DNA of 64,000 nucleotides from Iphione sp. A-MEVVRFRX5. Its lineage: Eukaryota. Both the position numbers and the translations under genes were made by a program. Shown here piece after piece: positions 16,336 through 55,000 of the stretch. Every line of letters begins with the position of its first letter. Position 1 is the first letter of the stretch. The stretch is taken from NCBI GenBank assembly GCA_976226885.1, contig OZ320319.1, forward strand, positions 84,816,001 through 84,880,000, given 5' to 3'. The notes under the pieces were generated by a model, which saw only the letters and a program-made list of their open reading frames with translations, was not told the origin of the DNA and did no database searches.

Positions 16336-17955
16336 CTATCGGCCTCATTCAACAACTACTTCATTGATGAAGTTGAAAGGCTAGCAAGGCCGGTCGTTGC
16401 CAGTGATGGAACTGATCCGTACCCGACGAACGAGGGTTTCGTCATAACTCCTCCCACTCCAATACAGGCTCGCAAGCTAGTGGAGACGATTGACACCCGC
16501 AAGTCGTCTGGGATTGATGGGGTACCATCTAAGATTTTGAAGCCTTTGCTGCTTCTGTGCCCGGACTTTGTTTCCTGGCTTTTTACGGAAACGTACAGAA
16601 CGGGGAGGTTTCCATTGAGCTGGAAGTGTGCACGTGTTACCCCAGTGTTCAAGAAGGGAGAACTGGAACAGCTGGCCAATTACCGGCCTGTTTCAATTCT
16701 CCCGGTTATCTCGAAACTCTGCGAGAGATGGTTCACTGAGGCTATTGTCTCAAAGCTGGAAGCAAACAATGCAATAGTTCCCAACCAGCATGGCTTTCGT
16801 GCAGGGAGGGGAACAGAAACGGCAGTAGTTAATATTGTGAACCAGGTACATGACCTAACAAATAGTGGCCTCTACACTTGTCTATTAGCCTTCGATTTAA
16901 AGAAGGCTTTCGACCTTGTGCCACATAGTATGGTAGTGAAGAGGCTACTCGAAATGGGGGCTGGTCAGCAAGTTTGTAAGATGATCAAGTCTTACCTTAG
17001 TAACAGATGCCAGTTTGTGCGGGTCTCTGGGCAAGACTCTCAAGTGCGAGCCATCAAACAGGGGGTGCCACAGGGGTCGATTTTCGGCCCTGTGGCATTT
17101 AATCTGGCCATAAACAACATTGTGAAGGTGCTTCCAGTGGAGTGCAAGGCTGTAATGTACGCGGACGATCTCTCAGTCGTGGCTTTTGCCCGAGATTTGC
17201 TGAGACTCCGCGGTACTGCAACCTTGGTCCTTAAATCTGTCGCAACCTGGTGTAACAATGAGGGCCTCAGGCTAAGCACGCAGAAGTGTGTGTATTGCCC
17301 ACTTGCAAAGGCCCATGGCATTTCACTAGATCTGTCATTAGATGGTCACTCCCTGTGCCTGGATAAGAGCCCTAAACTACTTGGGTACAGACTGGATGGA
17401 AAACTGAGTATGAGAGAATGTTGCAAGGAGGTGAAGAGGAAAGCCTGGACAGCTGCCCTAAAAACAGGGAGAACGAAGAGCTTTCTCCCTTTCAAAGCCA
17501 GACTGCTGTTGTTTAAAAGCCTGGTAGTTACACATTACCACTACAGCGCAGTATTGTGGTATGGTCTGCCCTCCAGGGTAATTGTAGACATGCAGGTACA
17601 CCTTAACCGGTGTGCTCGGGTGTGCCTACAGGGTAGCTCCCATCTGTCTGCAGCAAGGCTATACAGACACTTGGGAGTGACTCGGGTTGCTGACTTAGTG
17701 GCCCGTAAAGGTTTATGTGCAATACATAAACAGATGAGACTTGGACTGCTATGTCCAGACAGGTCCACCAAAACTAGACAAGGGTGTGATATCAGAGGGA
17801 TGGTGAACAGACCAAAAAGTACTAGGTATGCCAGGTCCTTGCGATACCTAGGGGTCAGGGAGTGGAACTCACTCCCTGCCCATCTGAAGATGAGAGATCG
17901 TCTTGGAGCAGGACTCAAGTGTGACGACGTGCTCGGGAGGGCTCTCCTTGTGTAG
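16336..17955 (+). CDS. LINE ORF2 reverse transcriptase domain and C-terminus (no endonuclease; 5'-truncated)
   Basis: Uninterrupted frame from the truncation point (FNNYF...) to the stop. Motifs NYRPVSIL, QHGFR, FDLKKAFD, GVPQGSIFGP, YADD and Y..YSAVLW. Confidence 0.92.
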   Translation, partial: LSASFNNYFIDEVERLARPVVASDGTDPYPTNEGFVITPPTPIQARKLVETIDTRKSSGIDGVPSKILKPLLLLCPDFVSWLFTETYRTGRFPLSWKCARVTPVFKKGELEQLANYRPVSILPVISKLCERWFTEAIVSKLEANNAIVPNQHGFRAGRGTETAVVNIVNQVHDLTNSGLYTCLLAFDLKKAFDLVPHSMVVKRLLEMGAGQQVCKMIKSYLSNRCQFVRVSGQDSQVRAIKQGVPQGSIFGPVAFNLAINNIVKVLPVECKAVMYADDLSVVAFARDLLRLRGTATLVLKSVATWCNNEGLRLSTQKCVYCPLAKAHGISLDLSLDGHSLCLDKSPKLLGYRLDGKLSMRECCKEVKRKAWTAALKTGRTKSFLPFKARLLLFKSLVVTHYHYSAVLWYGLPSRVIVDMQVHLNRCARVCLQGSSHLSAARLYRHLGVTRVADLVARKGLCAIHKQMRLGLLCPDRSTKTRQGCDIRGMVNRPKSTRYARSLRYLGVREWNSLPAHLKMRDRLGAGLKCDDVLGRALLV

Positions 17956-18605: not shown

Positions 18606-19655
18606 TAAAACACTGTTCGCCTGTGTTACATTTCCACAACATTGCTATATGTACAGACAATGTGTCAGTTACGTTGTACCTATATTATTATATATTTTTT
18701 GTAACCTACAGATATATTATTTCAAATATGTCAATATGTACAATTGTACACAATGTATGTATCAAGCATACTTGAACAACCGGAGGTTTCACAAAAGCTG
18801 ACACATTTTCAAAAAGTAAACTAGGTTGAAAGCTGCCACCGACCCCTCCAATTAATTCTACGTCTGACAGGACACTGCGAACAGATGGCGTTGTATGTAC
18901 CTGTATAATTCAGCTTTCAACCATTGTTTATACACGTCAATACAATAATACATGTACATACACGTGGGCACCGCCACCTATCGACATTCACCTTCACTAT
19001 GTGTCCACCTGCAGTCGAACCGGCATGTACACTCGGAACTGCCTGCGATGTCACAAGCATGGTAGCTCAGGACCACAACGCCGAAACTTCTGAGGGATTC
19101 TTCATTCCACCTTGGGTCTGTGCCTGCTGCTAGTGTTGCAGAATACTGCAGGACACACACACGGATGCTGGAGTACGGAGTCGGAATATACTGCTGATTT
19201 CGCCATAGATATAGTGTGGGTCATGGGTGAGTGCCCACAGACATCATCCGGGTGTACATTCCTTGTCAGGAATTCCTGTACTATACATAACTGTGTGTCT
19301 GCCTACAAAGGTACCTCAAGATTGTTATTATTTGATTTTTAATCAGCACCAATGTCGATGTGGAGGTCTGTATTCATAGGACAGATACGGATCAAACTTC
19401 ACTGATATAGTTCACAATGTGGCCGTCAGGGAAAATCGCAACAGTCGCCATCTAGCGATGATCTGTTTTATATGTGATGTTACGCATGAAAGCTCTCATG
19501 TGGAAAAGATTGTTATTCCCGCAAGTTAGTTTTCTCTCGCTTCTTTTTCCCCGGTTCTCTATCCCGGTGATTCATCGTTTGGAAAATGATTTCTGTCATG
19601 TGACCTCCACGCTCGTCTTTTGGAAGAAGGTCGTGACACAAAGAAAACATTAAAC

Positions 19656-20501
19656 ATGCCTCTGTACACTAAACCTTACAATAGCACCTGCCTTAACGTC
19701 ACAGACAGAGTGTTATGGCATCTGATGCTACCGCAGACGATATTTCTCAACTTCACCTTGTCTTGGTTGAAACTGACGACGCAGGAGCAGGCGTCCCGCC
19801 AGGAGGACCCGTGTTACGAACGCTATGTGATTCTCTCCTTCCTACTTCCCTTCATGCTCATTATCTCACTCCTCTATCTGCCCATCTTTACTGTGTCCTT
19901 CCTCTTATGGATGGCCATTCAAGGGCACCGTAATAACTGTGTCGTGCTCGTCACAGATAAGAGCAGTGAACAAACGCCAACGGCTCCAGATGAAATAACA
20001 GTGTTGTCTATAGACACTCGTCTGTTGCCGGAGTTTTGGTCGAGGCAACAGAATCTCTCCCACACTCTGAGACGCAGTCAAACGATCGGAAGGATCCTGA
20101 CAGGAACTCATCAAAATGGCCACCAGGAAACTACTCATATCGAAAGCGTTCAGACCACGTACGAAACTTATGCTACCACCAGTCATCAGTCACAGGGAAG
20201 CTCGGGGTCGAAAGCAAGAACTTTTGGCTTTCGTGAGGATATCCCTCCTGATGTAGGCGTTATTTGCCTCCAGGGAGTATACGACGAGCGCGCAGAAGAC
20301 AATCTGGTCTCTCATCTTTCGCGCCATTTTCCTTACGTCATCTCCAAGGTGACAGTGAACTCGTGGCGTACGAACCGCTTCCGGTGGGGGAGTGGACTCC
20401 TTCTTGCTAGTCATTATCCCATTGAAGATGCATTCTTTCAGACGTTTGATGATTCGACTTGTCAAGATGTGATCAAAGCGAAGGGCTTTCTAATTGTGAA
20501 G
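19656..20501 (+). CDS. SMPD3: nSMase2-like coding exon 1 (membrane-anchor N-terminus and start of the EEP catalytic fold)
   Basis: ATG at 19656, AAG|GTGAGT donor, 282 codons. Confidence 0.9.
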
Positions 20502-23500
20502 GTGAGTCTTTTCTTGAGCTCTCTTGATAACTGGGTAATTGATATGGATGAAACCTAGTTTTTTTTAAAGAACGGGGGTCCATGTTGAATATTACCTATC
20601 ATTTAAAAGATGATATCTTTCGATAAATGCATTCGTTATATATTACCAGAAAATCAGCATTTGGCCCTCACAGGTAATGTATACACACTAATACTCTACA
20701 GACTTACTTCATACAGGGTGGTTCCGTATGTTGTTAATTTGTGCATGGCATACTTATGTATTAAAACCTAGTATTTAAAAATTAACTAGCCCAGGTGATA
20801 ATTATCAGTTGGGCAGTACATAAAAGCATTTCTGATCAATGATACCAGAATAAAAGCACGATTATGAATATAAAGCATCTATTATTTTGATTCTAACTGA
20901 TATGTATGCTTTTGTTCACTCTTTAACTTCTTCCTGACTTCCCGAAAGCTTATCAGCCAAATTTGGTTGATAAGCCTATGGAAAGATAAAAAAAGCACAG
21001 TAAATCTGGGCATTAATTCTGAAATAAATGAACAGTTCATATTCTAGAGGGTATAAGCTATATAACTACCCCTAAAAGTATTGTTTTGTAACATGGGGTA
21101 TCACTAAGATGGCGATATAACTTTGCTGTAAGTCATGTGATGACAACTTTCTGAAGTTATTACCTATCCTGACTAGTAGTAATACTCTATGACCTACAAA
21201 TTCCATGTTACTTTATAATAAAACCCGGTAATATTTTTAGAATAATCCTTAAGTTTGTTTGCTCACTTTTTAAATACATTTTTATGTTATTACTTTGAAA
21301 ACGTGAAATAGATTGGAAATTCCTCGAGATTTTCTGTTAATGATTCACTTATACATAGACACTGGTATGACTGATAATTCTAATTTAACAGTTTCTTCAA
21401 GACATGCTATTGCCAACATCCTTGACATCCTTGCCGATGCAAACATATATTACCTTAGACTGTCATAAAAACCGATCAGGCCCATATATAAAGATAAATT
21501 ATGCATCAAACAGCTGGAAATGACTCGCTGAACACTCTCTTAATTCAACGTTTCTTTCGAGGAGCAATTCTTTTTAGTGTTTTCCTACTAGAAATGTAAA
21601 TTAGGCCTAAACAAAAAATACCTGTGTTTCCGGTAACCCGACCAACCCTACATCAGAGCCAATTGCAACTTTTTATTTTTTTCTTGTTTTCTGAATAACT
21701 TCAGAATGAATAATGATAGAGACATGTTCTATATACCAAATTACTCCTTAGCTTTGTAGCTTTCATTTGACATAAGTTTTATTAAAATCTAAGTAGTAGA
21801 AGTGATATTACTATACATATTTCTTCCTCTCATCCTGAATTAACATTGAAAAAAAAAGAAAAATAAAAAAAATATTACCTACCGACCGACCCTCTCTTTT
21901 TTGGGCTTGTTACCAGAAACACAGAACTTTTTTTTAGGCCTTAGTGTAAATTTAGTATAAATTTATGTGATCTCACATTCAATCCTGTCCTATTGCCATG
22001 GTAACTAGAAAAATAAATAAAAACACTTTAGATATAAGGTTCAATATATCAGCTTTCATATGGTATATAACATTGCAAATTGTCTGTAGTATCAAAACTA
22101 CAGATGAAGAAGCTTTGTTGACCTACATTTACCTCTTCAAATTTCACAATTTCTGGTGATCAGGAAGGAGTTAGACACCAAAGACAGTTTATCTTCACTG
22201 ACTGTCTTGAATAACAACACATTCTACACTTGTAGATATCACTACCAGGAAAATCCGGTGAAGCAGCAACTAGTCCTCTAGTAGTGGTGAACACAGAACT
22301 TCAAGAGGGAGCAGGTAATGTGTATAAAGTAATTATTAAAAAAAATTGATAAAAATAGTCAGCAAAGACAACTGGAACAGAACGCTAATAGAACGCTAAT
22401 TTGCATAGTTGATTGGGAATTATTTCACCAAATATTACATAATTACACTACCTATATAAAACGTTGCCTAAAGTAGTTCTGCCATGGGGAGGCTTTCTCA
22501 CCCTGATGAGATTTAAGACAGGGAAATTACTTTTCATATTGACCCATATGTACAGTAAGAGTATTGCAAAAAAAAGACATGTTATGTGCATTTTATCAAG
22601 ATTAATACCATTTAAAGGAGAAACAGAATCTTATACTGGACTATTTCGTTTAGATTGGTGTAGTAACACAATAATGACCTTGACCTTGTAAAAAAGGCCT
22701 CCCCTTCCCTGCCACCCCTGTGTGTGTACAGTCTGTACTTTGACCCCTCCCCCTGTACTTTGACCCCTCCCCCCTACCCCACCCCACCCCAAACCTCAAT
22801 CAGTGCAGTTGCTAAAGGCACTTGTGAAGTTATTCAAAAAATGTTTGATAGAGAGTAAAAAATGTAGGTATACATGTAGCAGCACAACAAGGCTTTCGGG
22901 TCACATCATAAGTGGACTGAGGCTGTGGAATGGGCTTCCCTCATAAGCAAAAGAGACAGATGAGATGCCAACCTTTGGGAGATTAATCCTTAAATTCTTG
23001 CATTCGATCAACAAATAGAGAAACCTGTCTAAGTTTTGCACAATTAACTAATATTCACTGGGAGACCTTGGTCACGTACTAAAGAAGTGAATAAAGGTTA
23101 TGTTTATGTCTATATTTAAAGGTAAAGCCAAAAATAGCTTTCATTGTTGACAGAACAAAAAATATTTCTCTAAATTCCCCTTGATACATTGGGCCATCCC
23201 TTGATTACTGCTAAATGGGAAGAGAGCGAGTAATTTTCATCTGTCCGAGAGTATGTTAAGGACTCTGTTGCAAATGAACTGAGAGTGCTGAAAATGTTCA
23301 TTCCTGTGAAATAGCTCAGTATTCTTACACTTCCATGGCCATGTTTTCTGTGCCTATGTCGGTGTTCTTGGCCCGCCCCCCTCCCTTCAGGGGAGCAGGA
23401 CTTAGAAATGCTGCTGTCCAACTGTCAGGCCCTGTTATTACACTGGGATCATTCCACACTCCAATGAACCTGCTCTACAGTACTGCTATTGAGGGATCGC

Positions 23501-26500
23501 TGGAGTGCTAGTCATCCCAATGTAATACAGTATTTATGCTGTATGATGTAATGATTGGCTTTTGACCAATGCCAATGAATAGTTTCATAAAAGTGTTGGA
23601 AAATAGCATCAGTCTAGTGATGTTTAGGCCTCCTAAAAGATATCTGTGCCCTTGGCTTTAATATGATACCAGTCTCATTAAGACCCAAGCAGCAGAAGTG
23701 ATAGCTCTAGACTTACTAGACTTACAAAGAACTATCTAGCTCTTTCACTATAACATTTGTATGTTAGAACAGAATAAACCCACCTATCTACCCACCATAT
23801 ATTTTCTCATCATGTTACTGGAAACAGAGATTTGTTGGTTTATTGGGGAGAGGGGAGGCCTTAGTAAATAATTGGTTGGTAGAAAATTGATAGGACCATG
23901 ATATCTCCCAGAATAATTAATGGAAAATACTTGTATAATGCTATATATGCAACAGACAGGTATTTTCTGGGACAATTGTGCACTAATAGCAATAAACCTA
24001 TGAAGCATGACATTTTGGAGTCTAAAGCATGACTTTTTCGGGTCTAAAATTATCATCTGCATACCCGTACTGTCAAGATTTTGTAACCCACAGAATAATC
24101 ACATACGGTGTTATTCTTTTACTGTAAGTGTACCTGAGTACAGCTAAGTTAAGGTACTGGTGAATAGAAAAACCGTTCTTTCATTTCTATCAGTAGAGGA
24201 CCTCTATATCTATATTTACCAGAGGTATGATATTTTGTTCAAAGATCTATCAAATCACTTTTCAGAACAAAAACCACTAGACATACGTTTGCAGCAGAGA
24301 AAGCAATTGTCCAATGTTCTCATTGATGAATTGGACAAAGTGAATAGGGGCTGTGCTTGTATTCTGAGTGGTAATTTCCACATGGATAAATTACCTTCAG
24401 GTAAGATATTTACATGTATTAAAATCATACATTGAAAATAGTAGACGAGATTACTGTGCCTTTCTATTAGGCACCCCCCCAAAAAAAACGGTCTGTTTAT
24501 GGTAACGGCCAGCCAAAAACCTAGGTAGGGAGGGGGTATCTTTTTAAAAGTTTTTTTCAATTTCTTCCTCTGGCCGTTTCAATTTCTTCCTCTAGTCCTG
24601 TCTTTGATATATCCTGGTCATAAATCCCAACCATATAATACTGTGTGCATTTTATTTCAATATCTTACATTTCAATGTGTATATTTTGATATAGATTATT
24701 GATATTTTTCATGTTACTTTACACAGTAGAAATTCGCATTGCAGTCAGCTCAGAACAGTCCACATGCGATTCTGATCTAATTTGCCTAAAACTAACCATT
24801 TGCCTCTATAATATACTTAAATGTCAGGAATACGGTCATCTTGCTAAGGCCTAAACAAAAAATATCTGTGTTTCCGGTAACCCAACTGACGCTGCCTTTG
24901 ACCCACTGGAACATTTTATTTTATGATATTTTTGTTAATATCTCTGGAATGGATGATAGTAGAGACATATACAATACACCATTTCGTTGCTCACATTATT
25001 AGCTTTCATCTTATAACAGTTTTATAATCCAGTCAATATAACCTATGTTACCATTTATATGTTTAGCTTTGAGTATGATTTAACATTAAAAAAGCAAAAA
25101 AATATACCACCTACCTACCAACACTCTAAATTTTCATCTGTTACTGGAAACAAAGAATTTTTTTAGGCCTAATAGAATTGCCTTACCCTGTGTTTCTGTA
25201 TATTGCTTATATTGCGTACCAAAGCAACAAATCCCATCTACAATATACTCAAAAATAGCATATACAAAGGGAAATCACCGAACCAACACAGTTCACGGAG
25301 TCAACCAGGCAACAGAGTCGAAAACAACTTCGGTTGGCCACACCTCTTGCATAATGCCTATAAAACTAGCTGCATTGCCAGAGACAATGCAACATCATTC
25401 ATTCAGAAAACACCTGGAATATGTGGGTCCTTCGACGATTGGCTATTGGAAATGATCAGATTCTGGTCGACAAGCTATTGTAGTCACTTTTACTGGGGGG
25501 CGGGGGAGCCACTGTATCTGTTGTTAACAGGGTTCCATTATTGACCACATCAATCTCTTCCTTGTAAAATATAATTTCATTTTAATATTGATAGAGGGTC
25601 CTATCATAGACAAGTTCATGGACTCGCGTGATCTTCAGTCCGACCCTGGATCACTAGGCCTCATAGGTAAGGGCACCAGATCATACACGTACAAATAATG
25701 TCAATCTCTAGTCTGCCCATCCCGCGCACCCCCGCCACGAACAATTAGATTACTCCATAGTCTGTACCAAATAAATAGGGGCCTAAATCTACTCATTACC
25801 CTCGTCAACTTGATTCTCACTATATCCAGCCTGAAATTAAGGATGATAGAAAACTTAGCTCACTTTCCACCAGCTTTTAACATGAAATAGACTGCTTCAA
25901 TGGGACGTCCTCTTTGAGGCCTCTCTCTCAGATCAAATGCTTCAGATTGTGACAAGTAAGGATTATGAAAGCCTCTTGTAATTCACCTCGTGCTTTTGCT
26001 TTTAGCCTCGGAGATCAAATCTGAACTGCTTTATGATCCTTCTTTGTCGACCCCTAAATCCATGAAAAGGTAGGTAGAATAGATAGGCTGTTAATTACAC
26101 AAAAACAATTATGTACAGTCAAGTAAACGTAATATTCTTACATCAGTGCAAAAGTGCAAAAAAGATACGCTGAAGGATAGCAGATACAGAGCAGACTTAT
26201 GAACACAAGATGGCTGCCAGATAGAAAGACTACCTCTTACATCAATGATAACACTTTTTTTATGTCACTTGCTATTTCAAAATGTCTTGAACTTTAAGGT
26301 ATTTCGTCATTCTACCCTTGTAAGCACCTTATTTGGTACAATGGAATCTTAGATTAATGGGTGCTGAGGAATATGTGACTTGAAGAGGTCTTGTAGTCCA
26401 CATGTATTATACTTCAGGACGCTGGAGACAACAGTCGGACGGCAGGAGTTTCTAGTGGATGTTGAGTCATCCGCGAACGATGACGCACCCACCCCTACTT

Positions 26501-28038
26501 CCGGTCACATGATGCTCCTTTACAGAAATGGGTTTCACATGGAGCTGGTACGTGTTTCATTCCCCTAAAATGGACTCTTTACATGCAGGCAATAAAACAA
26601 CTTACAGTGAAAAAATTACCTTACGGACATGTGTGTAACAGGGGCATGTTTCTCATAGGGACATACATTTGGGAAATGTATGTGGGAAGGATAGATTGTA
26701 TTTTCTATATATTAGGGTCCCTTATAGCAGGCCCGTATCCAAGGGGGTATCGAAGGTATCGTCCGATACCCCCCATCCAAGATTTCTACATATACACTTA
26801 AATAGTGTTGTTCACCAGAATGTTCCATCCCTGTGGTATTGGGGGTATCGTCCGATACCCCCCCCCCCCCCGAAAACTTCCTGGCTACGGGCCTGCTTAT
26901 AGGGACACATCTTCATTGACCAATCCCCAGACTGTCAACCACCCAGTTATAAAACCGCTGGTTTTTTGGCTGTTTATATGTAGTATTTCCAACGATGTCA
27001 ATATTCAACTACTCCAATAATATTATATGCATTTTGGTTGGTTGAAAAGCCATGATAATGTCACAAACGACAAAACAAACTTCATGTTGTAGTGTATTCC
27101 TTAACAACTTAGCGATGGGTCAAATGGGGAAAGAAACAAACAAAGGTGTTCTGCTAGTAGGCTTTCCACTGGATTCTTTTGGATTCTTCAATATGTGTCT
27201 GTGTGGAATTTCCCTGAAAAAGCAACCAGTCTTTGAAAAGATCAGTGCTGTTTTCTTGAATTGCTTTTATCGCATGTATACTGCCCTACGTGTTCTCTAA
27301 CATGCAAACCATTTGTTTCTTTCAGAACGTACAGATGTATAAATATGTAACACGATTGGCTGGCCTCACATTATTTCTGCCAATTTCGGTATCATTGGGA
27401 ATAAGAAAAGGTAAACTTTTTAGTTTTTTTTCTAAACTGAAAATGTTCCCCAATTTTTCTCTTAGGTCTGTATAGTAAATGGCAGTGTTTTAATTTCATT
27501 TTCACTGTTTAACCAGGAATATATTCACCTATCATCAGGACGGTTATTTTTATTGATATTACTACAATTACAAAGTGCTTAGAAAATGCTTGCAGTGTTA
27601 GTGGAGGGAAATGCACATGTGTCCCCTCGGACTTCTACCACCTCTCTAACCAGACCACCTCCCCAATAAGACCCTTTTTAAGGAACAAAATTTCATATAT
27701 GTACTTCAGTACCCCTTTCTAATAAGATCACTCTCTATTGTGACCACTTGAGTTCAGAACCAACAGTGCTCTTATTAGTGAGGGGGCACTGTATATGCAC
27801 CGGAGGTTAGAATATGTTTCTGGCAGTTGATATTGGGAGGGTACTTTGTGATGAGATGTGTGACCTGTGCAACTCTGACAGTTGGATCAATTCTTATGGA
27901 AGAAACATGATCTGTAAATCTTTGAAAATTTTCCTAAATATGTTTATCTCTAGGCCACTGGGAATCATGTCGTGCCATTGCTATCATAGCTCTTGTCTTA
28001 TCCGACACTTTCCTCTGTCAGTATTTGGAGACAGCTGA
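19656..28038 (+). CDS. SMPD3: Neutral sphingomyelinase 2 (SMPD3/SMPD5 family)-like protein, 8 coding exons, about 475 aa, probably catalytically inactive
   Basis: Exons 19656-20501, 22236-22314, 24266-24400, 25595-25666, 26006-26069, 26418-26547, 27326-27410 and 28022-28038 (last exon tentative). All GT-AG with matching phases, 1428 nt in total. N-terminus MPLYTKPY..W.L.LP..TT.EQ..RQEDPC with two hydrophobic segments, GSGLLLASHYPI, KG.L.VK, LYD....TP and YVTRLAGLT..LP all match the nSMase2 pattern. The symbol denotes family homology, not proven orthology. Confidence 0.88.
21604..21940. mobile_element. PIF/Harbinger (Tourist-like) MITE, family A, copy 1
   Basis: TIR GGCCTAAA..TGTGTTTCCGGTAAC / GTTACCAGAAACACAG..TTTAGGCC with 3-bp TSD TTA. 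Confidence 0.85.
22236..22314 (+). CDS. SMPD3: nSMase2-like exon 2 (ISLPGKSGEAATSPLVVVNTELQEGA)
   Basis: TAG acceptor, CAG|GTAATG donor, phase 0 to 1. Confidence 0.8.
24266..24400 (+). CDS. SMPD3: nSMase2-like exon 3 (..IRLQQ..CILSGNFHMDKLPS)
   Basis: TTTTCAG acceptor, CAG|GTAAGA donor, 135 nt, phase 1 to 1. Confidence 0.85.
24470..24545 (+). mobile_element. Left end of a Harbinger-type MITE, family B (fragment)
   Basis: TTAGGCACCCCCCCAAAAAAAA..GGTAAC..GCCAAAAACC resembles the left end of 34829-35162. Confidence 0.5.
24848..25169. mobile_element. PIF/Harbinger MITE, family A, copy 2
   Basis: Same TIRs, TSD TAA/TAA, 322 bp. Confidence 0.85.
25595..25666 (+). CDS. SMPD3: nSMase2-like exon 4
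   Basis: TAG acceptor, TAG|GTAAGG donor, 72 nt, phase 1 to 1. Confidence 0.7.
26006..26069 (+). CDS. SMPD3: nSMase2-like exon 5 (ASEIKSELLYDPSLSTPKSMK)
   Basis: Pyrimidine-rich TAG acceptor, AAG|GTAGGT donor. Matches the nSMase2 LYD..CTP segment. Confidence 0.8.
26418..26547 (+). CDS. SMPD3: nSMase2-like exon 6 (RTLETTVGRQEFL..GHMMLLYRNG)
   Basis: CAG acceptor, CTG|GTACGT donor, phase 2 to 0. Matches LE...GR.E.L. Confidence 0.8.
26728..26895. mobile_element. hAT-like MITE, family C, copy 1
   Basis: TIR CAGGCCCGTA / TACGGGCCTG, flanking direct repeat CTTATAG (7 bp), internal GGGGGTATCG..CGATACCCCC motifs. Confidence 0.7.
27326..27410 (+). CDS. SMPD3: nSMase2-like exon 7 (NVQMYKYVTRLAGLTLFLPISVSLGIRK)
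   Basis: TTTCTTTCAG acceptor. Aligns with nSMase2 FITQLSGLTDHLPVAMRL. Confidence 0.82.
28022..28038 (+). CDS. SMPD3: Tentative terminal coding exon (VFGDS*) of the nSMase2-like gene
   Basis: CTTTCCTCTGTCAG acceptor, phase 1. An alternative acceptor exists at 29071. Confidence 0.45.
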
Positions 28039-28754
28039 GGAAGGAATTCCTCAACTGTTAAGTAGTCATTTTTTTCGTGACAAGCTTCAGTTAGCCTGTC
28101 GTTAATTACTATACAGTATTCTGTCTTGATGGCGCCGAGATTGCCAGAGGATTGTACCAATCCACAGTAACTGTTTTAGAATTACCTTGTTTCTCTTTTG
28201 AGGTGTGGCTACTGTCCATTCTAAAGAGTGCTGGCACCAATATCTCCCTTTTAGGTGTGCTAATTCTCCCCCACCTCATAGAGGGGGGGGGCATTAGGAA
28301 TGCTGCTGCTAGCTGGTTGTCCTCACCTTCTATCACATTCTTGTGGGTCTTATATGTCTTAAACCCTTCACTCAAAAGAACTGATTATAATATATGATAT
28401 TGGTATATATGGCCCTATGGCACTGGGTAGTTTTGGTAGTAATTCAAGTATTTTAAAGGTGAAATTATACCAATTTTACTCTGTTGCTAACACACCTGCA
28501 AACATACATACCTGGTTTAGAGATTCCTAGGTCTGTCAATGCACACACATGCGCATATACACACTCACCAATACCTCCTTTCTACCAGTAACAGCTTGTA
28601 GCAGTCAGGCAGAACCAAGGGTGCTGTGCTTAGTCATGCAGAACCGAGGGTTGTAAACATGAAGGACTTAAACAAGCCCAGCCAACCACCCCAAAATAAG
28701 GTGCCAATCAAAATGGTTGTAAAGAGAGAGACACACCACACACACTCACTCAGT

Positions 28755-28787
28755 CTCTCTCTCTCCTTCTCTCTCTCTCTCTCTCTC
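28755..28787. repeat. (CT)n microsatellite
   Basis: Direct inspection. Confidence 0.9.
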
Positions 28788-29226
28788 ACCTGGGCAGTTG
28801 ATGGCCAGGAGACAATAGACCTCACAGGTCCACACTCTTGTTTCACATAAATTTTCAGCAAAGGTCTGTAACTAGGAAATATTCTGTGGTGCTAGCATCG
28901 ATTGTCTTGATCCACAGTCGGTGATACATGACTGAATATATCAAAGACATACACCATTTTAAACATTTAGAACACTATTCACTCTATTTTGCTCATTTTG
29001 TATGGTGTCTGTCAATCTATTCTTGATCAAGATACTAAAGTTTGTACTCTGTGTTTTCCTTCGTATCATAGGAGACGCCGTGGTCTAATTATTGGCTTAT
29101 GCTGACGCAATCTGTGCCTGTACTGGAATATTTGCCTCTTTCACCGGAAGGTAGTTCGGAGGTTCATGCAATTAGCTGGAAAGCTATCTCAAAGATAACT
29201 GTATCTCGAGACTAGCAAGATAAAAT

Positions 29227-29444
29227 CAGGCCTGTAGCCAAGGGGGTATCGGGGGTATCGGCCAATACCCCCTACAAAGGCCAGGAGGTCCACCCAGAGA
29301 ATAAATATCCCAGGAAATGTGAGGAAATACCCTAGAAATGCCCTATAAGAAGTGAGAAAAGTAAAAAATGTGAGGAAAAGTGAGGAAACATGTTGCCTGC
29401 TTGCCAGGAGATACCCCCCAGAAAGATTTCTGCCTACGGGCCTG
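29227..29444. mobile_element. hAT-like MITE, family C, copy 2
   Basis: CAGGCCTGTAGCCAAGGGGGTATCG ... TACGGGCCTG. TSD is not clean. Confidence 0.65.
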
Positions 29445-30146
29445 TAAATGAAGCATCTTTGGGATCTAGCAAGCCGTTCTGCAGAGGTAACTTCAAGTCA
29501 GACTATACTGGCCTTAGTATTAATTCGATCAGAATGATGGGCCAATTCGCTCTTCCCTAATTATCATCGAGTATTATAGAAATGAATGTTTTCCCATGTC
29601 TTCCGTGTGTCTTACAAATAAATACTCCTCAGACATGTTGTTTCTTCTTTATACTGGTGCTGTCTTAACATTATATGATAAAAGGTGATAAAAAAAACTA
29701 TCCGTAAGGTGGCGTAACACGAGACAGTACATAATGGCCTCAGGTATCACTCCAGTGATTCCAATGCACACAGGAAGAAATAGCTGTACAGACAAAAAGA
29801 AAATTAACCAGAATCCACCCAAGAGAATGAAGAATGACTCGGACCAAACTCAACAACCTGTAAGGGCCGGTTTCAATACTTGTGTCAGTGTGTTGTGATA
29901 GTGTTTGTATTGCATTACGTTGCATTGAGGTTGACTGTGGCTGGTCATGATAATCCATTTTCCAGCATATAGTTCTGCATCTGGGGTGCGAAAGCCTGTA
30001 TTTGTCCTGCATTACATAAGTGCGTTTCCCACGTAAAAACTATATGATAGTATGTTCTTGGACATGACATGGAATGTCCTTAAAGTGTGCTAAACGAGTC
30101 TCTTTCGTTTCCAAGAAATATCCTAAATTTATATCAACAAGCGCCT

Positions 30147-30295
30147 NNNNNNNNNNNNNNNNNNNNNNNNNNNNNNNNNNNNNNNNNNNNNNNNNNNNNN
30201 NNNNNNNNNNNNNNNNNNNNNNNNNNNNNNNNNNNNNNNNNNNNNNNNNNNNNNNNNNNNNNNNNNNNNNNNNNNNNNNNNNNNNNNNNNNNNNN
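30147..30295. other. Assembly gap (149 N)
   Basis: Run of N. Confidence 1.
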
Positions 30296-48330: not shown

Positions 48331-49077
48331 CTGCATCCAGCACGAGGGATCACCCTGCCTCCCTCTAGGGTAGTTCATACGACTCACACAAGAGGCCATC
48401 AATGAAAAACACATTAGGTAAACAAGAAACCATGCCGATTACTTGGTTTTCTTGGAAACAGGATTTCACTTACACAACGCAAACTCACTACCCTGAAAGA
48501 TGAACTGCATTCCCATTTGTATCCTCCAGGGAAGCTGTCTTTTTTTTCTCTCTCACACACACTCTAATTCACCACTGAGTGTTTTGTTTTTGTTTTTATC
48601 CCTCCCCCCCCGAGTAAATATGGCAAACAACAAGAGCATAAAAAATCGACCAGAAATGCTGTTTTCATAAACATACTAAACACCATCCGAAAGGCTTGAA
48701 AATAATAACGCTTATTTTCAAAGCTTCGAATATACAAAGATGCTATCGAAAAAAAAATGAAGGAAACAAAGGAAATAATAGTTGACTTGGGCAGTCAGTC
48801 TGATGTGTGTTGTAATAGGCTGTCAGGATCCCAGTGGGCGGGGGTGGGGGCCTGAGGGCTTGGCCACTAACAGAAGGGAGGCCATCTATACAGGCTCTAC
48901 TCACACATGTCTTCATGTTTTCTCTTACTTCACATGCTGGCAAAGGTGGCCTTCACATTTCCAGCACAGCCTTGGCAGCTGTGAGGGTCCCATACCCCAC
49001 CATGTGAAGAAGCATGGCGGTGCTGGCGTAGACAGGTCTCCATGCAAGCAGGCGCAACATGTTCTTATCCCTCTCAC

Positions 49078-49644
49078 GCAGACCGCAGCCCAGGTAGCAT
49101 CCATGTTCCACTCTTATCCATCTCCATGTTGCATGCAGACTGCAGCCTGGGTAGCATCCATGTTCCGCTCTTATCCATCTCCACGTTGCATGCAGACCGC
49201 GGCCTGGGTAGCATCCATATTCCGCTCTTATCCATCTCCATGTTGCATGCAGACTGCAGCCTGGGTGGCATCCATGTTCCACTCTTATCCATCTCCATGT
49301 TGCATGCAGACTGCAGCCTGGGTAGCATCCATGTTCCGCTCTTATCCATCTCCATTCTGCGTTCAAAGAGCAGCCTGGGTGGCATCCATATTCCGCTCTT
49401 ATCCATCTCCATGTTGCATGCAGACTGCAGCCTGGGTGGCATCCATATTCCGCTCTTATCCATCTCCATGTTGCATGCAGACTGCGGCCTGGGTAGCATC
49501 CATGTTCTGCTCTTATCCATCTCCATGTTGCATGCAGACTGCATCTCCATTCTGCATTCAAAGAGCAGCCTGGGTGGCATCCATATTCCGCTCTTATCCA
49601 TCTCCATGTTGTGTGCAGACCGCAGCCTGGGTAGCATCCATGTT
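49078..49644. repeat. 57-bp minisatellite, about 10 copies, about 190 bp downstream of the DIP2 stop codon
   Basis: GCAGACTGCAGCCTGGGTAGCATCCATGTTCCGCTCTTATCCATCTCCATGTTGCAT units. Confidence 0.95.
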
Positions 49645-49833
49645 AAGAACCTGTGTACACGCATACACCATGAGACTCTCTTTCATAAGACTATGTATCC
49701 TGCCTGGTGCTCCTGCTGCCACCTGCCAGCGCCCTCAGTTGTGAGTAGATATGACCTCCCCTGACCTCTGACCTATAAAGCCCTCGGTCCACTTGTTCCT
49801 TCCGTACGTCGAAGTGGCCGCGTGCGGACTTCC

Positions 49834-52029: not shown

Positions 52030-55000
52030 TACTGTGTTGGGTGGCTTACCTCCATCCGACTGCGTCATCTCAGTCCGTCGGATGAATCCCAGATACCCAG
52101 TGCGGGCGTAGGTAGTATGGACGTCTCCTGTGGCCAGTTGTGCCTCGAAATGGTCAGCGTGCAGAGAGTCGTCGCCATAGATGGTGTAGTAGCCACTGGC
52201 ATTCTGAGGACTGTTCACCCAGATCTGGCACAACATGAAGCAGAATGGGATGGATGAGTGGTTGACTAGGGAGACAGACGAATATATAGATGTATGGATG
52301 GATAGATTGGATAGATTGGATGGATAGATTGATGGATGGATGACTGGGTGGATGGATGGATGGATGGATGGATAGCATGATGAGAGACAGGCAGATGGAC
52401 ATACAAGTGGAATAATGGATCGATGGAAGAGTGGTGAAAGATGGCTGAACGGTGGGAAGGGATGTATGGATACATGGGTGGATGGACCCATAGAGGAGCA
52501 GATAGATGGAGCAACGATAAGGGGATACCTGAATGGATGGATGGACAGACAGAATGACAAATGGTTCCATGAAACAAGATAGAGGATGGACAGACAGGTG
52601 AACTGATGGGAAAATGGAAGCATAGAAGTAGGTGGAGTGACAGGGAATGAGACGAGAAGGGAAGGGATTGGTAAGAAGTGAGTGAGGTANNNNNNNNNNN
52701 NNNNNNNNNNNNNNNNNNNNNNNNNNNNNNNNNNNNNNNNNNNNNNNNNNNNNNNNNNNNNNNNNNNNNNNNNNNNNNNNNNNNNNNNNNNNNNNNNNNN
52801 NNNNNNNNNNNNNNNNNNNNNNNNNNNNNNNNNNNNNNNNNNNNNNNNNNNNNNNNNNNNNNNNNAGCGATAGAGAGAAGGGAAGATGGATAAAAGGATC
52901 AAAGAAGGGGGATACGGAGGGCGGAATAGGTTGAAGGCAGGCAACATGAGCCCAGCACTCGGGAGTAGAGGAGGTCTGTATGCAGAAAAGGAGGAAGAAT
53001 GAAGGAGGAAGGAGGAAAGTAGAGCAGTCGTGAGGAGCGTGGTGGTGGTGAGGCGGGGCCATCTTAATGTCTCGACATACACCAACATGATGACGCACGT
53101 ACCCAGCTATCAGGAAATCACCTTCAATCATTTTTTAAGAAGAAAAAATACAGTCACGTAGTACTATTCCAAACTCTCATTCCTGCAGCCCCTTCACTAA
53201 CCCAGTCAGATTACCCGGCTACAGAATTCAACCATATATAGTGTACAACCGTCAGCATTCTTACCAAACAGGTTCGGAACAACGATATGTGTATTCTCTC
53301 TCATGCACCTGCAACCTTTAGACGCGTAAAATACATTACTACTTTGTAATCTTCAAATGCCCTGTTTAGGCGCTACTTCCCTTTCACTTCCCTCCATGCA
53401 ACACTTTGTACACAAAGATGGTGGTAATCAAATCAAATAAAAAATATTTGACTATCCCACTCTGACATCATAAGTCAGCCATATTGACCTTGGCAGCCAT
53501 TTTGAATATTTTTGAATCTAATTAATTTTTGCACCAAACCTAACTTAATCAATGAGAACTGTTCAGTTACCACCTCCTGAAGAAGACCCGCATAAGGGGA
53601 CGAAATATTGAGGAAATGTAACAACCATGCAACATTAATAAAAACAACATTCCTACATATGGGGTTACCTGGTTTTGTTTGTCCTATATGTAAGCAAATC
53701 AAATGAATCAAAACCGACCATGGTTGAACCCCCCAAAGGGAGGTTCCGTAGAAAGGATGACTGATGACAGGAGTCGGTGCTCACTCACCTCACCCAGGTG
53801 CGAATCCGCACACTGGCCCTTCGTTTCAGGATTAGCTATCACTACATTGACACCAGGCAGAAGCTGAAATTCAAAGGAAGAGAGCCGTTATTACAACACT
53901 GCAACAGCCAACTCTCTGATATACACGAACAGAGAACAGATTGGTACGTTAGGCTTTGTGAAGACATCGTATGAAGACGTATCATCAGAAAACGCATATT
54001 ATAAAACACTGAATTTAACTTTTTAAATCGCTTGAAATGATACCTGAAAATAAACTATGGGAAATCGTACATGTAGGAAAACCCCATATTTTAAAACTCA
54101 CCTGATTTGAAACCGTGGTCTGGAAGTTATAAGGCAAACAAAATGACGACGGACGGTTGGACAGTGAAACAGCAGCCATCCTAGGTCCCCCCCTTATGAA
54201 GTAGTGGACAAGAAAGGTAAGGTCTCACAACATTTGCACATGATTATTTTCCACCTGACTGAAAACCCGGAGCTGGGGCAGCTACCTACCTTGCCGGACT
54301 CCATGACACAGAGGCTGTGGGGGCTTCCCTTCTCCACCAACGCCACGCGGTCGTTCCTCAGGGCCCGCATGTCGACATACACCTGCGACGGGTCAGGACT
54401 GGAGGCGCCCTGCAGATGAGAGGACAGCACAGCCAAACCAATCAGTACAGGTGCGATATCGGAGGTTATACATTATTACAGAAGTCGTTCCTGATCGTTG
54501 GAAGAATTATGCACGGAAAAGTAGAGGGACCTTATCTGTTACTGAACTGTCATTGTTCATGTCAAGTGACAGGGAGAGCTTGCACATCATGACCAAATAA
54601 ATTTCGCATTCCTTATTCCTGGGAGTCTCACAGAGAGTCAAGAAGGACAGCCCAGAAACAACTGTGGTGTCTCCCCAATTTAGAGACAAGTGATGTTACG
54701 TAGTTTGTAAACGGTGGGGAATAGCAGGGTGTTAGGCTGATTATCCACTGATCGGTAGTTTAGTGTTCCCTGTGTTAATGTAGTGGGGGCAGCTGCCATA
54801 GGTACAAAGCTCCTTCCTTTCATTACAGACTGTCAATACATGTATACTGTAGTGCGTTTAACGTTAACACGGCAAAGAAGTGACGGCTCAGTCAAGATTA
54901 CCGAACCACTCAATATCCCCCCCCAAAAAAAAAAAAAAACCCACCCATTTCTGAACAAATACCTCCTGATACAAACCGACTCTGTCCTACAGAAACAGCA

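What the first reader, a model, noticed from the sequence alone, without database searches (positions are those of the whole stretch)
19656..28038. Intact nSMase2-like gene with the entire catalytic set replaced: candidate membrane-anchored pseudo-sphingomyelinase
Seen: eight exons splice in frame to about 475 aa with no stops or frameshifts. Established (human nSMase2 motifs and numbering recalled from memory, to be verified): catalysis in this EEP/DNase I-like fold needs N130, E364 (LQE), H461 (THL), D510/N512 (GDFN), D607 (RIDY) and D638-H639 (TDH). By hand alignment the equivalent positions here read SIDTRLLP (N to D, 20013), CLQGV (E to G, 20274), NTELQ (H to E, 22296), SGNFH (D to N and N to H, 24373 and 24379), GHMMLLY (D lost, about 26510) and GLTLFLP (DH to LF, 27371-27376). 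Retained: the two N-terminal hydrophobic segments, the DPC cysteine, GSGLL.AS.YPI and the D-x4-K 'DK switch' (QDVIKAKG). Several changes need multiple nucleotide substitutions while the frame and splice sites stay perfect. Inference: long-term selection on a non-catalytic paralog, for example a lipid sensor, scaffold or regulator of an active nSMase, rather than a dying pseudogene.
Basis: partly seen in the sequence, partly recalled or inferred. Interest (0 to 1): 0.82.

Follow-up and report, generated by a model that had tools for sequence, protein, structure and literature searches.

The report
Catalytically dead neutral-sphingomyelinase-2-like gene
This animal gene encodes a membrane-anchored relative of neutral sphingomyelinase 2 that has lost every residue needed for catalysis, and it belongs to a conserved, apparently undescribed invertebrate clade of such "dead" enzymes that probably bind or sense lipids instead of cutting them.

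Summary
The residue-level observation is confirmed. On the + strand, exons 19656-20501, 22236-22314, 24266-24400, 25382-25441 (or -25426), 26006-26069, 26418-26547 and 27326-27475 splice in frame to a 482-487 aa nSMase2-like protein. A profile of 31 canonical family members matches it at E about 1e-46. All seven human active-site positions are replaced (N130D, E364G, D510N, N512H, D607 lost, D638L, H639F), and so is the conserved TH histidine (E). The N-terminal hydrophobic domain, juxtamembrane region, SGL..AS..P motif and D-x4-K switch are kept.

Two corrections apply. The homologous exon-4 donor is GC rather than GT, so the splice sites are not all perfect.

The gene belongs to a monophyletic "LQG" clade (SH-aLRT 98) found in at least five other unannotated invertebrate assemblies and one full-length spliced transcript. 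Glycine at E364 is fixed across the clade, while the other catalytic positions drift. In the closest relative, two haplotype-like copies give dN/dS 0.06 over the folded parts. The window's exon 1 shows no rate acceleration.

No RNA data, no same-genome active paralog and no publication on such a pseudoenzyme were found. It is most likely a selected pseudoenzyme. A recently disabled copy remains possible.

The parts
19656..20501 (+). Exon 1 (282 codons): start codon, N-terminal membrane domain, juxtamembrane region, variable linker and first half of the catalytic-type domain
   Evidence: Translation. Donor AAG|gtgagt. 5UVG alignment at E 5e-9. 45-48% identity to P0001/P0002.
19710..19769 (+). 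First, weaker hydrophobic segment (residues 19-38, mean Kyte-Doolittle 1.16)
   Evidence: Aligns with the N-terminal segment of relatives.
19803..19919 (+). EDPCYERY motif and second, strong hydrophobic segment (residues 50-88; mean Kyte-Doolittle 2.25 over 57-88)
   Evidence: This is the most conserved block in the clade.
20007..20096 (+). Juxtamembrane region SIDTRLLPEFWSRQQNLSHTLRRSQTIGRI. It contains the N130-equivalent, here Asp120 (GAC at 20013).
   Evidence: L123, E126, R130, N133 and R140 are invariant in the clade alignment A2.
20265..20285 (+). CLQGVYD: the Mg-binding Glu364 equivalent is Gly207 (GGA at 20274)
   Evidence: Direct alignment to 5UVG, profile alignment and tabulation of 151 homologs.
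20358..20384 (+). NSWRTNRFR: clade-specific conserved motif in the place of the Cys-rich loop of canonical nSMase2
   Evidence: W237 and N240 are invariant in A2.
20466..20483 (+). D-x4-K 'DK switch' (DVIKAK, D271...K276), retained
   Evidence: Aligned to DALASK of 5UVG. Retained across the clade. Its role in nSMase2 is given in PMC9697135 and PMC13492263.
22236..22314 (+). Exon 2, with NTELQ: the family's near-invariant TH histidine is Glu (GAA at 22296)
   Evidence: ttgtag| acceptor and CAG|gtaatg donor. NTELQEG is shared with L001/L002. T-H is at least 90% conserved in alignment A3.
24266..24400 (+). Exon 3, with SGNFH in place of GDFN (Asp510 to Asn at 24373; Asn512 to His at 24379)
   Evidence: tttcag| acceptor and CAG|gtaaga donor. 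Profile alignment. Multiple alignment.
25382..25441 (+). Exon 4, shortened and uncertain at its 3' end. The homologous donor is G|GC at 25442. An alternative weak GT donor would end the exon at 25426. Skipping the exon also keeps the frame.
   Evidence: Relatives have G|GT at the homologous Gly codon.
26006..26069 (+). Exon 5 (SEIKSELLYDPSLSTPKSMK), matching the family's ...LYDEDVxTPExLxxxL segment
   Evidence: tblastn and profile hits. ttttag| acceptor and AAG|gtaggt donor.
26418..26547 (+). Exon 6, with SGHMMLLY in place of GRRIDYxLY (Asp607 position lost)
27326..27475 (+). Exon 7, most likely terminal: YKYVTRLAGLTLFLPISVSL (Asp638-His639 replaced by Leu-Phe at 27371-27376), then read-through to the stop at 27473-27475
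   Evidence: More than 20 canonical proteins align here with LTDH over LTLF. Relatives and a cDNA stop 8-30 codons after the motif within the same exon.
27954..28105 (+). Possible eighth exon if the GT at 27411 is used as a donor. It is not supported by any relative.

Best explanation
The locus is a seven-exon animal gene for a 482-487 aa protein with the architecture of neutral sphingomyelinase 2. It has an N-terminal monotopic membrane domain, a juxtamembrane region, a short variable linker and an EEP/DNase-I-type domain. The metal-binding and acid-base residues are all gone, so it cannot hydrolyse sphingomyelin by the family's mechanism.

It belongs to an old, separately branching clade of such proteins in invertebrates. 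Loss of catalysis is ancestral to that clade: Gly is fixed at the Glu364 position. The protein has since been kept under purifying selection.

Inferred mechanism, not shown: the protein still inserts into the cytosolic membrane leaflet. It probably still couples lipid binding by the N-terminal domain to the catalytic-type domain through the retained juxtamembrane region and DK switch. On that reading it acts as a non-hydrolysing lipid binder or sensor, or as a partner or competitor of the active nSMase2, rather than as an enzyme.
For: Architecture and family:
- The spliced product matches a profile of 31 canonical catalytic domains at E about 1e-46.
- Exon 1 aligns to 5UVG.
- The exhaustive HMMER search returns 200 family members.

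Catalytic residues:
- 0 of 7 human active-site residues are kept, and the TH histidine is lost too (residue list from PMC9697135).
- N130A alone abolishes human nSMase2 activity (PMC13492263).
- No hidden exons with canonical motifs exist in the introns.

Clade:
- The LQG clade is monophyletic on the exon-1 tree (SH-aLRT 98; window + P0001/2 at 96).
- Catalytic positions in relatives are:
  - L001: D|G|E|S,H|N|T,R
  - L003: D|G|H|N,E|C|N,H
  - L004: N|G|H|Q,G|N|L,N
  - L005: N|G|H|Q,G|N|L,Q
  - L009 cDNA: N|G|H|N,S|N|A,Y
- The clade-specific NSW-x-TNRF motif and the EDPCYERYVIL, LLPE..R..NL, SGL..AS..P and D-x4-K motifs are conserved.

Selection:
- L001 vs L002 gives dN/dS 0.064 in the folded parts (13 synonymous, 3 non-synonymous, p 1e-6).
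- The downstream exons of that pair differ by 1 synonymous and 0 non-synonymous changes.
- L004 vs L005 has synonymous sites saturated at pS 0.91 with dN 0.20.

The window's own copy:
- A 322-codon open stretch (p about 1e-9).
- Six of seven junction pairs are canonical, with pyrimidine tracts.
- No rate acceleration in exon 1, and 58/65 clade-conserved columns kept.

Fold and expression in a relative:
- The AF2 model of clade member P0043 has 203 residues at pLDDT 90 or more. Its best PDB match is 5UVG (E 1e-26, TM 0.69/0.75).
- The full-length cDNA-like contig L009 encodes 526 aa without introns.
- L009 aligns to 5UVG at E 1.8e-48.
Against: - No RNA or DNA sequencing run holding this gene could be listed. 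Expression and the exon junctions of this copy are therefore unverified.
- The homologous exon-4 donor is GC, and exon 4 has lost about 10-13 codons, including the DPC...W segment.
- Exons 2-7 are only 20-26% identical to relatives, against 28-32% among the relatives themselves.
- Exons 2-7 show a borderline excess of unique changes against L001: 25 vs 13, 26 vs 14 and 23 vs 12 (p 0.05-0.06) with clade outgroups. There is no excess with canonical outgroups.
- dN/dS could not be measured on the window's own lineage, because the nearest relative is only 45-48% identical.
- No binding or regulatory function has been tested for any clade member.
- It is not shown that this genome also has an active nSMase2.
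Confidence: 0.7

Rival explanations
1. The clade is functional, but this particular copy has recently been disabled and is starting to decay. The GT-to-GC change at the exon-4 donor, the in-frame shrinkage of exon 4 and a faster C-terminal half would be the first lesions.
For: - The exon-4 donor is G|GC where L001, L003, L004 and L005 have G|GT.
- Exon 4 lacks the DPC...W block present in all relatives.
- There is a borderline excess of unique substitutions in exons 2-7 (p 0.05-0.06).
- No RNA evidence exists.
Against: - There are no stops or frameshifts in about 480 codons.
- All three possible treatments of exon 4 keep the frame.
- GC-AG introns are used in animals (general knowledge).
- Exon 1 shows no acceleration and keeps 89% of clade-conserved columns, the same as its relatives.
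- The excess in exons 2-7 disappears with canonical outgroups.
Confidence: 0.2
2. The protein is still an enzyme that uses a different set of residues or acts on a different substrate. The conserved Gly at the Glu364 position and the NSW-x-TNRF motif would form a new active site.
For: - Gly at the Glu364 position is fixed rather than drifting.
- A new, strongly conserved motif has appeared next to the old site.
- The DK switch, tied to substrate recognition in nSMase2, is retained.
Against: - All EEP-fold phosphodiesterases known to me need the metal-binding Glu and the Asp-His pair (general knowledge).
- The remaining former catalytic positions differ between clade members, which argues against a shared replacement chemistry.
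Confidence: 0.06
3. Gene-model artefact: the real transcript uses other exons that carry the canonical motifs, or an active gene has been mis-assembled.
For: Junctions were inferred without RNA data.
Against: - Profile and motif scans of all frames of 19000-29500, and of the whole window on both strands, find no further family exon and no LQE, GDFN, RIDY or LTDH motif in a credible context.
- The same non-canonical residues occur at homologous exons in independent assemblies.
Confidence: 0.02

Closest known systems
Human neutral sphingomyelinase 2 (SMPD3; catalytic domain structure PDB 5UVG)
   Same: - It has the same domain order: two N-terminal hydrophobic segments, a juxtamembrane region, an insertion/linker and an EEP catalytic-type domain.
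- The LLP...AR..NL juxtamembrane motif, SGLL.AS.YPI, the D-x4-K switch, TP..L and the LAGLT strand are conserved.
- A clade member's model superposes on 5UVG.
   Different: - All seven active-site residues are replaced.
- The linker is about 45 residues instead of about 165.
- The Cys-rich loop before NSGL is replaced by NSWRTNRFR.
- The DPC...PW segment is shortened.
Canonical invertebrate and cephalochordate nSMase2-like proteins annotated 'sphingomyelin phosphodiesterase 3-like/5-like' (Liolophura sinensis, Lingula anatina, Ptychodera flava, Saccoglossus kowalevskii, Patiria miniata, Antedon mediterranea, Branchiostoma)
   Same: They share the family and N-terminal domain, at 32-36% identity to exon 1.
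   Different: These keep E364 and, apart from the sea-star and related sequences that have Asp at position 130, N130 as well. Lingula and Branchiostoma also show the downstream catalytic motifs. They branch outside the LQG clade.
Mitochondria-associated nSMase (SMPD5) and yeast ISC1
   Same: They are homologous EEP sphingomyelinases with membrane-anchoring segments and a DK (P-loop-like) element (PMC10682184).
   Different: They are active enzymes with the full catalytic set. Vertebrate SMPD3/SMPD5-type sequences form a separate clade on the tree.
Bacterial sphingomyelinase C / S. aureus beta-toxin (PDB 2DDR, 3I41 and others)
   Same: They share the same fold and show weak sequence matches to exon 1. 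They are among the structural matches of the clade model.
   Different: They are soluble secreted active enzymes with no N-terminal membrane domain.
Monosiga brevicollis XP_001749944.1 (P0084) and related protist sequences
   Same: They also have LQG plus degraded GDFN, RIDY and TDH motifs.
   Different: On the short catalytic-region tree they group with other sequences, not with the animal LQG clade. They are therefore probably an independent loss.

Membership tests
nSMase2-type neutral sphingomyelinase (SMPD3/SMPD5 family, EEP fold) | Homologous EEP catalytic-type domain detectable by sequence | tested here: met
   Family profile E about 1e-46 over positions 4-295 of 299. 5UVG E 5e-9 on exon 1 alone. 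Pfam Exo_endo_phos reaches only 18.5 bits, below the 24.5 cut-off, on exon 1.
nSMase2-type neutral sphingomyelinase (SMPD3/SMPD5 family, EEP fold) | N-terminal domain with two hydrophobic segments followed by the juxtamembrane region | tested here: met
   It aligns from residue 1 with canonical proteins. Segment 57-88 has mean hydropathy 2.25 and segment 19-38 has 1.16. Domain description from PMC13492263.
nSMase2-type neutral sphingomyelinase (SMPD3/SMPD5 family, EEP fold) | Active-site residues Asn130, Glu364, Asp510, Asn512, Asp607, Asp638, His639 | tested here: not met
   The window has D, G, N, H, gap/M, L and F at these positions. Residue list from PMC9697135.
nSMase2-type neutral sphingomyelinase (SMPD3/SMPD5 family, EEP fold) | DK switch (Asp430...Lys435) | tested here: met
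   DVIKAK aligns to DALASK of 5UVG.
nSMase2-type neutral sphingomyelinase (SMPD3/SMPD5 family, EEP fold) | Mg2+-dependent hydrolysis of sphingomyelin, activated by phosphatidylserine | not testable with these tools
   This needs recombinant protein.
nSMase2-type neutral sphingomyelinase (SMPD3/SMPD5 family, EEP fold) | EEP three-dimensional fold of this protein itself | not tested
   The spliced product has no reference and could not be submitted. Clade member P0043 folds confidently and matches 5UVG.
Animal 'LQG' clade of nSMase2-like proteins (defined here) | Gly at the Glu364 position within C-[LF]-Q-G-V-[FY] | tested here: met
   CLQGVYD.
Animal 'LQG' clade of nSMase2-like proteins (defined here) | NSW-x-TNRF motif before the (G)SGL motif | tested here: met
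   NSWRTNRFR at residues 235-243.
Animal 'LQG' clade of nSMase2-like proteins (defined here) | Placement inside the clade on a family tree | tested here: met
   SH-aLRT 98 for the clade and 96 for window + P0001/P0002, on 75 rows and 274 columns with a quick IQ-TREE search.
Unitary or decaying pseudogene | In-frame stops or frameshifts | tested here: not met
   There are none in any of the three splice variants.
Unitary or decaying pseudogene | Loss of splice signals | tested here: inconclusive
   The exon-4 donor is GC at the homologous site, and a weak GT lies 15 nt upstream. All other sites are canonical.
Unitary or decaying pseudogene | Accelerated, unconstrained substitution | tested here: inconclusive
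   Exon 1 is not accelerated (p 0.59). Exons 2-7 are borderline (p 0.05-0.06 with clade outgroups, not significant with canonical outgroups).

The most novel reading that the evidence does not exclude
Invertebrates carry an ancient, selected, membrane-anchored pseudo-nSMase2. It keeps the lipid-activated allosteric apparatus (N-terminal domain, juxtamembrane region, DK switch) but not the chemistry. It would work as a sphingolipid or anionic-lipid sensor, or as a regulator of the active nSMase2 (ceramide and exosome pathway). This would be a class of sphingomyelinase regulator not described so far.
Probability: 0.5. Interest if true: 0.65.

Novelty: new variant of a known kind. Interest (0 to 1): 0.55.

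Why it matters
nSMase2 controls stress-induced ceramide production and exosome biogenesis, and it is a drug target. No endogenous protein regulator derived from the enzyme itself is known to me.

A conserved dead paralog that keeps the membrane anchor, the juxtamembrane coupler and the DK switch would be a natural experiment. It separates lipid binding and allostery from catalysis.

It would also give sphingolipid researchers a candidate regulator or sensor to test in marine invertebrates. The pattern seen here (Gly fixed, other catalytic sites drifting, a new NSW-x-TNRF motif) points to which surfaces matter. The clade was not found in vertebrates or in any named, annotated proteome, which limits its immediate reach.

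Tried and rejected
- **Sequencing runs.** Two searches for runs holding exon 1 (kinds any and rna) listed none. No junction or expression test was possible, and read laying was not used.
- **Closer relative for dN/dS.** A scan of JGI metagenome contigs for a closer relative found nothing.
- **Word-indexed protein searches.** Searches with exon 1, with a clade alignment and with the full-length cDNA product returned only unnamed fragments. No annotated ortholog was found.
- **Taxon of relatives.** Assembly and run accessions (GCA_013332975, JAAUXT, SRR3401642) are not mentioned in the paper library. The taxa of the relatives and of the window therefore stay undetermined. Notes of other agents suggest a mollusc- or annelid-like genome, which I did not test.
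- **Literature.** 'Neutral sphingomyelinase' plus 'pseudoenzyme' gave 0 papers. An SMPD3/SMPD5/phylogenetic search gave nothing relevant. One badly framed search was useless. Airola et al. 2017 (PMC5514751) is not held.
- **Short exons against the PDB.** Exons 3 and 7 alone do not reach significance. Their residue equivalences rest on the family profile and the multiple alignment.
- **Codon-usage score.** For exons 2-7 it favours the proposed frame (-15 vs -36 and -39; intronic null -78 +/- 18). It is biased by the absence of stops and is weak for exon 7, so I give it little weight.
- **Short catalytic-region tree.** The 97-column tree is unresolved for deep branches. It was used only to show that the hagfish and Monosiga LQG sequences are not close to the animal clade.
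- **Paralog in the window.** None was found on either strand.
Full report
**What is there**

The window is animal DNA, about 40% G+C with multi-kilobase introns. The ATG at 19656 opens a 282-codon exon that ends at AAG|gtgagt (20501). It lies in a 322-codon stop-free stretch, the second longest in all six frames of the window. The chance expectation for such a stretch is about 1e-9.

Downstream exons were placed in three steps:
- first by homology (tblastn with family members; a profile built from 31 canonical catalytic domains);
- then by comparison with orthologous loci of other assemblies;
- finally by AG/GT sites and phase.

The model is e1 19656-20501, e2 22236-22314, e3 24266-24400, e4 25382-25441 (or -25426), e5 26006-26069, e6 26418-26547 and e7 27326-27475. 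Introns are 348-1951 nt. The product is 487 aa with the GC donor, 482 aa with the upstream GT donor, or 467 aa if exon 4 is skipped. All three variants are in frame with a single terminal stop.

**Check of the observation**

The family profile aligns the spliced protein at E about 1e-46, with these pairings:
- clqEvf over clqGvy
- ntHlq over ntElq
- cGDfNfD over sGnfHmD
- rRiDyily over h--mMlly
- LtDHip over LtLFlp

Human nSMase2 (5UVG) aligns directly to exon 1, with LQE over LQG and DALASK over DVIKAK. More than twenty canonical proteins align to exon 7 with LTDH over LTLF.

The human active-site list (Asn130, Glu364, Asp510, Asn512, Asp607, Asp638, His639) and the DK switch (Asp430/Lys435) are as given in PMC9697135. 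N130A is catalytically dead and D430A keeps 1-2% activity (PMC13492263). The extra TH histidine is at least 90% conserved in my family alignment. I could not verify its number.

Two points need correction.
- In four genomic relatives and one cDNA, the exon with the LT-xx motif is the last one and stops 8-30 codons later. The window gene therefore most likely ends at 27473-27475, and the eighth exon is unsupported.
- The exon-4 donor is G|GT within a Gly codon in L001, L003, L004 and L005. In the window it reads G|GC.
- The only in-frame GT donor for exon 4 lies 15 nt upstream (gtcctt) and lacks the +3 purine that all the other donors of this gene have.
- Exon 4 also lacks about 10-13 codons, including the DPC...W block.

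No other exon carrying canonical motifs is hidden in the introns or elsewhere in the window.

**What it belongs to**

An exhaustive HMMER search with exon 1 gave 200 family members. Most have Asn and Glu at the positions of N130 and E364.

A subset has Gly at E364. On a 75-row tree, the window, P0001/P0002, P0003, P0004, P0005 and P0007 form one clade (SH-aLRT 98). The window is sister to P0001/P0002 (SH-aLRT 96).

I fetched the loci of these fragments and located their downstream exons with the canonical profile. The catalytic positions, in the order N130 | E364 | TH | D510, N512 | D607 | D638, H639, are:

| Sequence | N130 | E364 | TH | D510, N512 | D607 | D638, H639 |
|---|---|---|---|---|---|---|
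| window | D | G | E | N, H | lost | L, F |
| L001/L002 | D | G | E | S, H | N | T, R |
| L003 | D | G | H | N, E | C | N, H |
| L004 | N | G | H | Q, G | N | L, N |
| L005 | N | G | H | Q, G | N | L, Q |
| L009 (cDNA-like) | N | G | H | N, S | N | A, Y |

Gly is fixed, while the other former catalytic positions have drifted to different residues in each lineage. By contrast, several blocks are conserved across the clade:
- EDPCYERYVIL and the hydrophobic segment
- the juxtamembrane LLPE..R..NL..T..R motif
- SGL..AS..P
- the D-x4-K switch
- a clade-specific NSW-x-TNRF motif, which replaces the Cys-rich loop of canonical nSMase2

This is the signature of one old loss of catalysis followed by long retention of the protein.

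Named canonical neighbours on the tree come from a chiton, a brachiopod, hemichordates, echinoderms and amphioxus. No member of the LQG clade carries a name in any source.

Gly at the same position also occurs in a Monosiga protein with other degraded motifs, and in a hagfish SMPD3-like protein that is otherwise canonical. These do not group with the animal clade.

**Selection and expression**

L001 and L002 are 97-98% identical in their flanks and so are haplotype-like. Over the folded parts of exon 1 (229 codons) they differ by 13 synonymous and 3 non-synonymous changes. That gives dN/dS 0.064 and a binomial p of 1e-6. Their downstream exons differ by one synonymous change. The 40-codon linker has 20 non-synonymous and 3 synonymous changes.

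L004 and L005 are saturated at synonymous sites (pS 0.91) with dN 0.20.

L009, a 1,857-nt contig assembled from one public run, carries an uninterrupted 526-aa clade member. In genomic loci the same protein is split over seven exons, so L009 is a spliced transcript.

An AlphaFold2 model of its catalytic part (P0043) is confident, with 203 residues at pLDDT 90 or more. Its best PDB match is 5UVG (E 1e-26, TM 0.69/0.75).

**The window's own copy**

The nearest relative is only 45-48% identical, so dN/dS cannot be measured on this lineage. Indirect tests give the following.
- In exon 1 the window has 30 unique changes against 26 for P0001 (p 0.59). It keeps 58 of 65 clade-conserved columns, the same share as its relatives.
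- In exons 2-7 the window is more derived: 20-26% identity to relatives, against 28-32% among the relatives themselves.
- There the unique changes are 25 vs 13, 26 vs 14 and 23 vs 12 with clade outgroups (p 0.05-0.06). There is no excess with canonical outgroups.

Together with the GC donor and the shortened exon 4, this leaves room for a recently disabled copy. I put that at about 0.2. No sequencing run holding the gene could be listed.

**How it most likely works**

*Shown:* the architecture is that of nSMase2, and the chemistry of the family is impossible, because the metal-binding Glu and Asn and the Asp-His pair are absent.

*Inferred:* in human nSMase2 the N-terminal domain anchors the enzyme in the membrane and binds phosphatidylserine. 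It activates the catalytic domain through the juxtamembrane region, and the DK switch is tied to substrate recognition (PMC13492263 and PMC9697135). Those elements are the best conserved parts of the clade.

The most economical reading is therefore a membrane-bound, lipid-responsive, non-hydrolysing protein. It could be a lipid binder or sensor, or a partner or competitor of the active enzyme. A new enzymatic activity is unlikely, because the former active-site positions differ between members.

**Novelty**

Pseudoenzyme branches are common in enzyme families. I found no paper on a dead nSMase2-type protein and no annotated member. I rate this as a new variant of a known kind, of moderate interest.

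**Limits**

- The taxon was not determined here. Other agents' unchecked notes suggest a mollusc- or annelid-like genome.
- No same-genome search for an active paralog was possible.
- The fold of the window's own product could not be run, because the spliced sequence has no reference.
- The N runs at 30147-30295 and 52690-52865 lie outside the gene and were left untouched.

Noticed in passing
window 16480-17955 (+): A 491-aa open frame with reverse-transcriptase-like motifs (for example ...VMYADDLSV...) lies about 1.7 kb upstream of the gene's start codon. It is probably a non-LTR retroelement fragment.
   Followed up: no
L001 10415-10534 vs L002 (linker of exon 1): The 40-codon linker between the juxtamembrane region and the catalytic-type domain differs by 20 non-synonymous and 3 synonymous changes plus an indel between two otherwise 97-98% identical haplotype-like loci. 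The rest of the exon has dN/dS 0.06. The linker is a hypervariable segment.
   Followed up: partly
P0084 (Monosiga brevicollis XP_001749944.1), P0065, P0143 (Eptatretus burgeri A0A8C4NHP7), P0032/P0059/P0115/P0150: Other nSMase2-like proteins have also lost Glu364. One is a choanoflagellate protein with LQG, GDLG, RTSY and ACH. One is a hagfish protein with LQG but otherwise canonical motifs. A third is a group with LQQ. These look like independent events.
   Followed up: partly
L009 109-1689 (+): A run-assembled 1,857-nt contig (Logan, SRR3401642) holds a complete, intronless 526-aa member of the dead clade. It is in effect a full-length cDNA. The database protein P0043 is only its C-terminal 379 aa with a different tail.
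   Followed up: partly
L007 2049-2375 and L008 1539-1865 (-): A C1q-domain gene lies directly downstream of a dead-clade exon 1 on two metagenome-derived contigs. This may hint at the host taxon.
   Followed up: no
window 48782-49764: A tandem repeat region is open in several frames on both strands, just before the DIP2-like gene that other first-reader notes describe.
   Followed up: no
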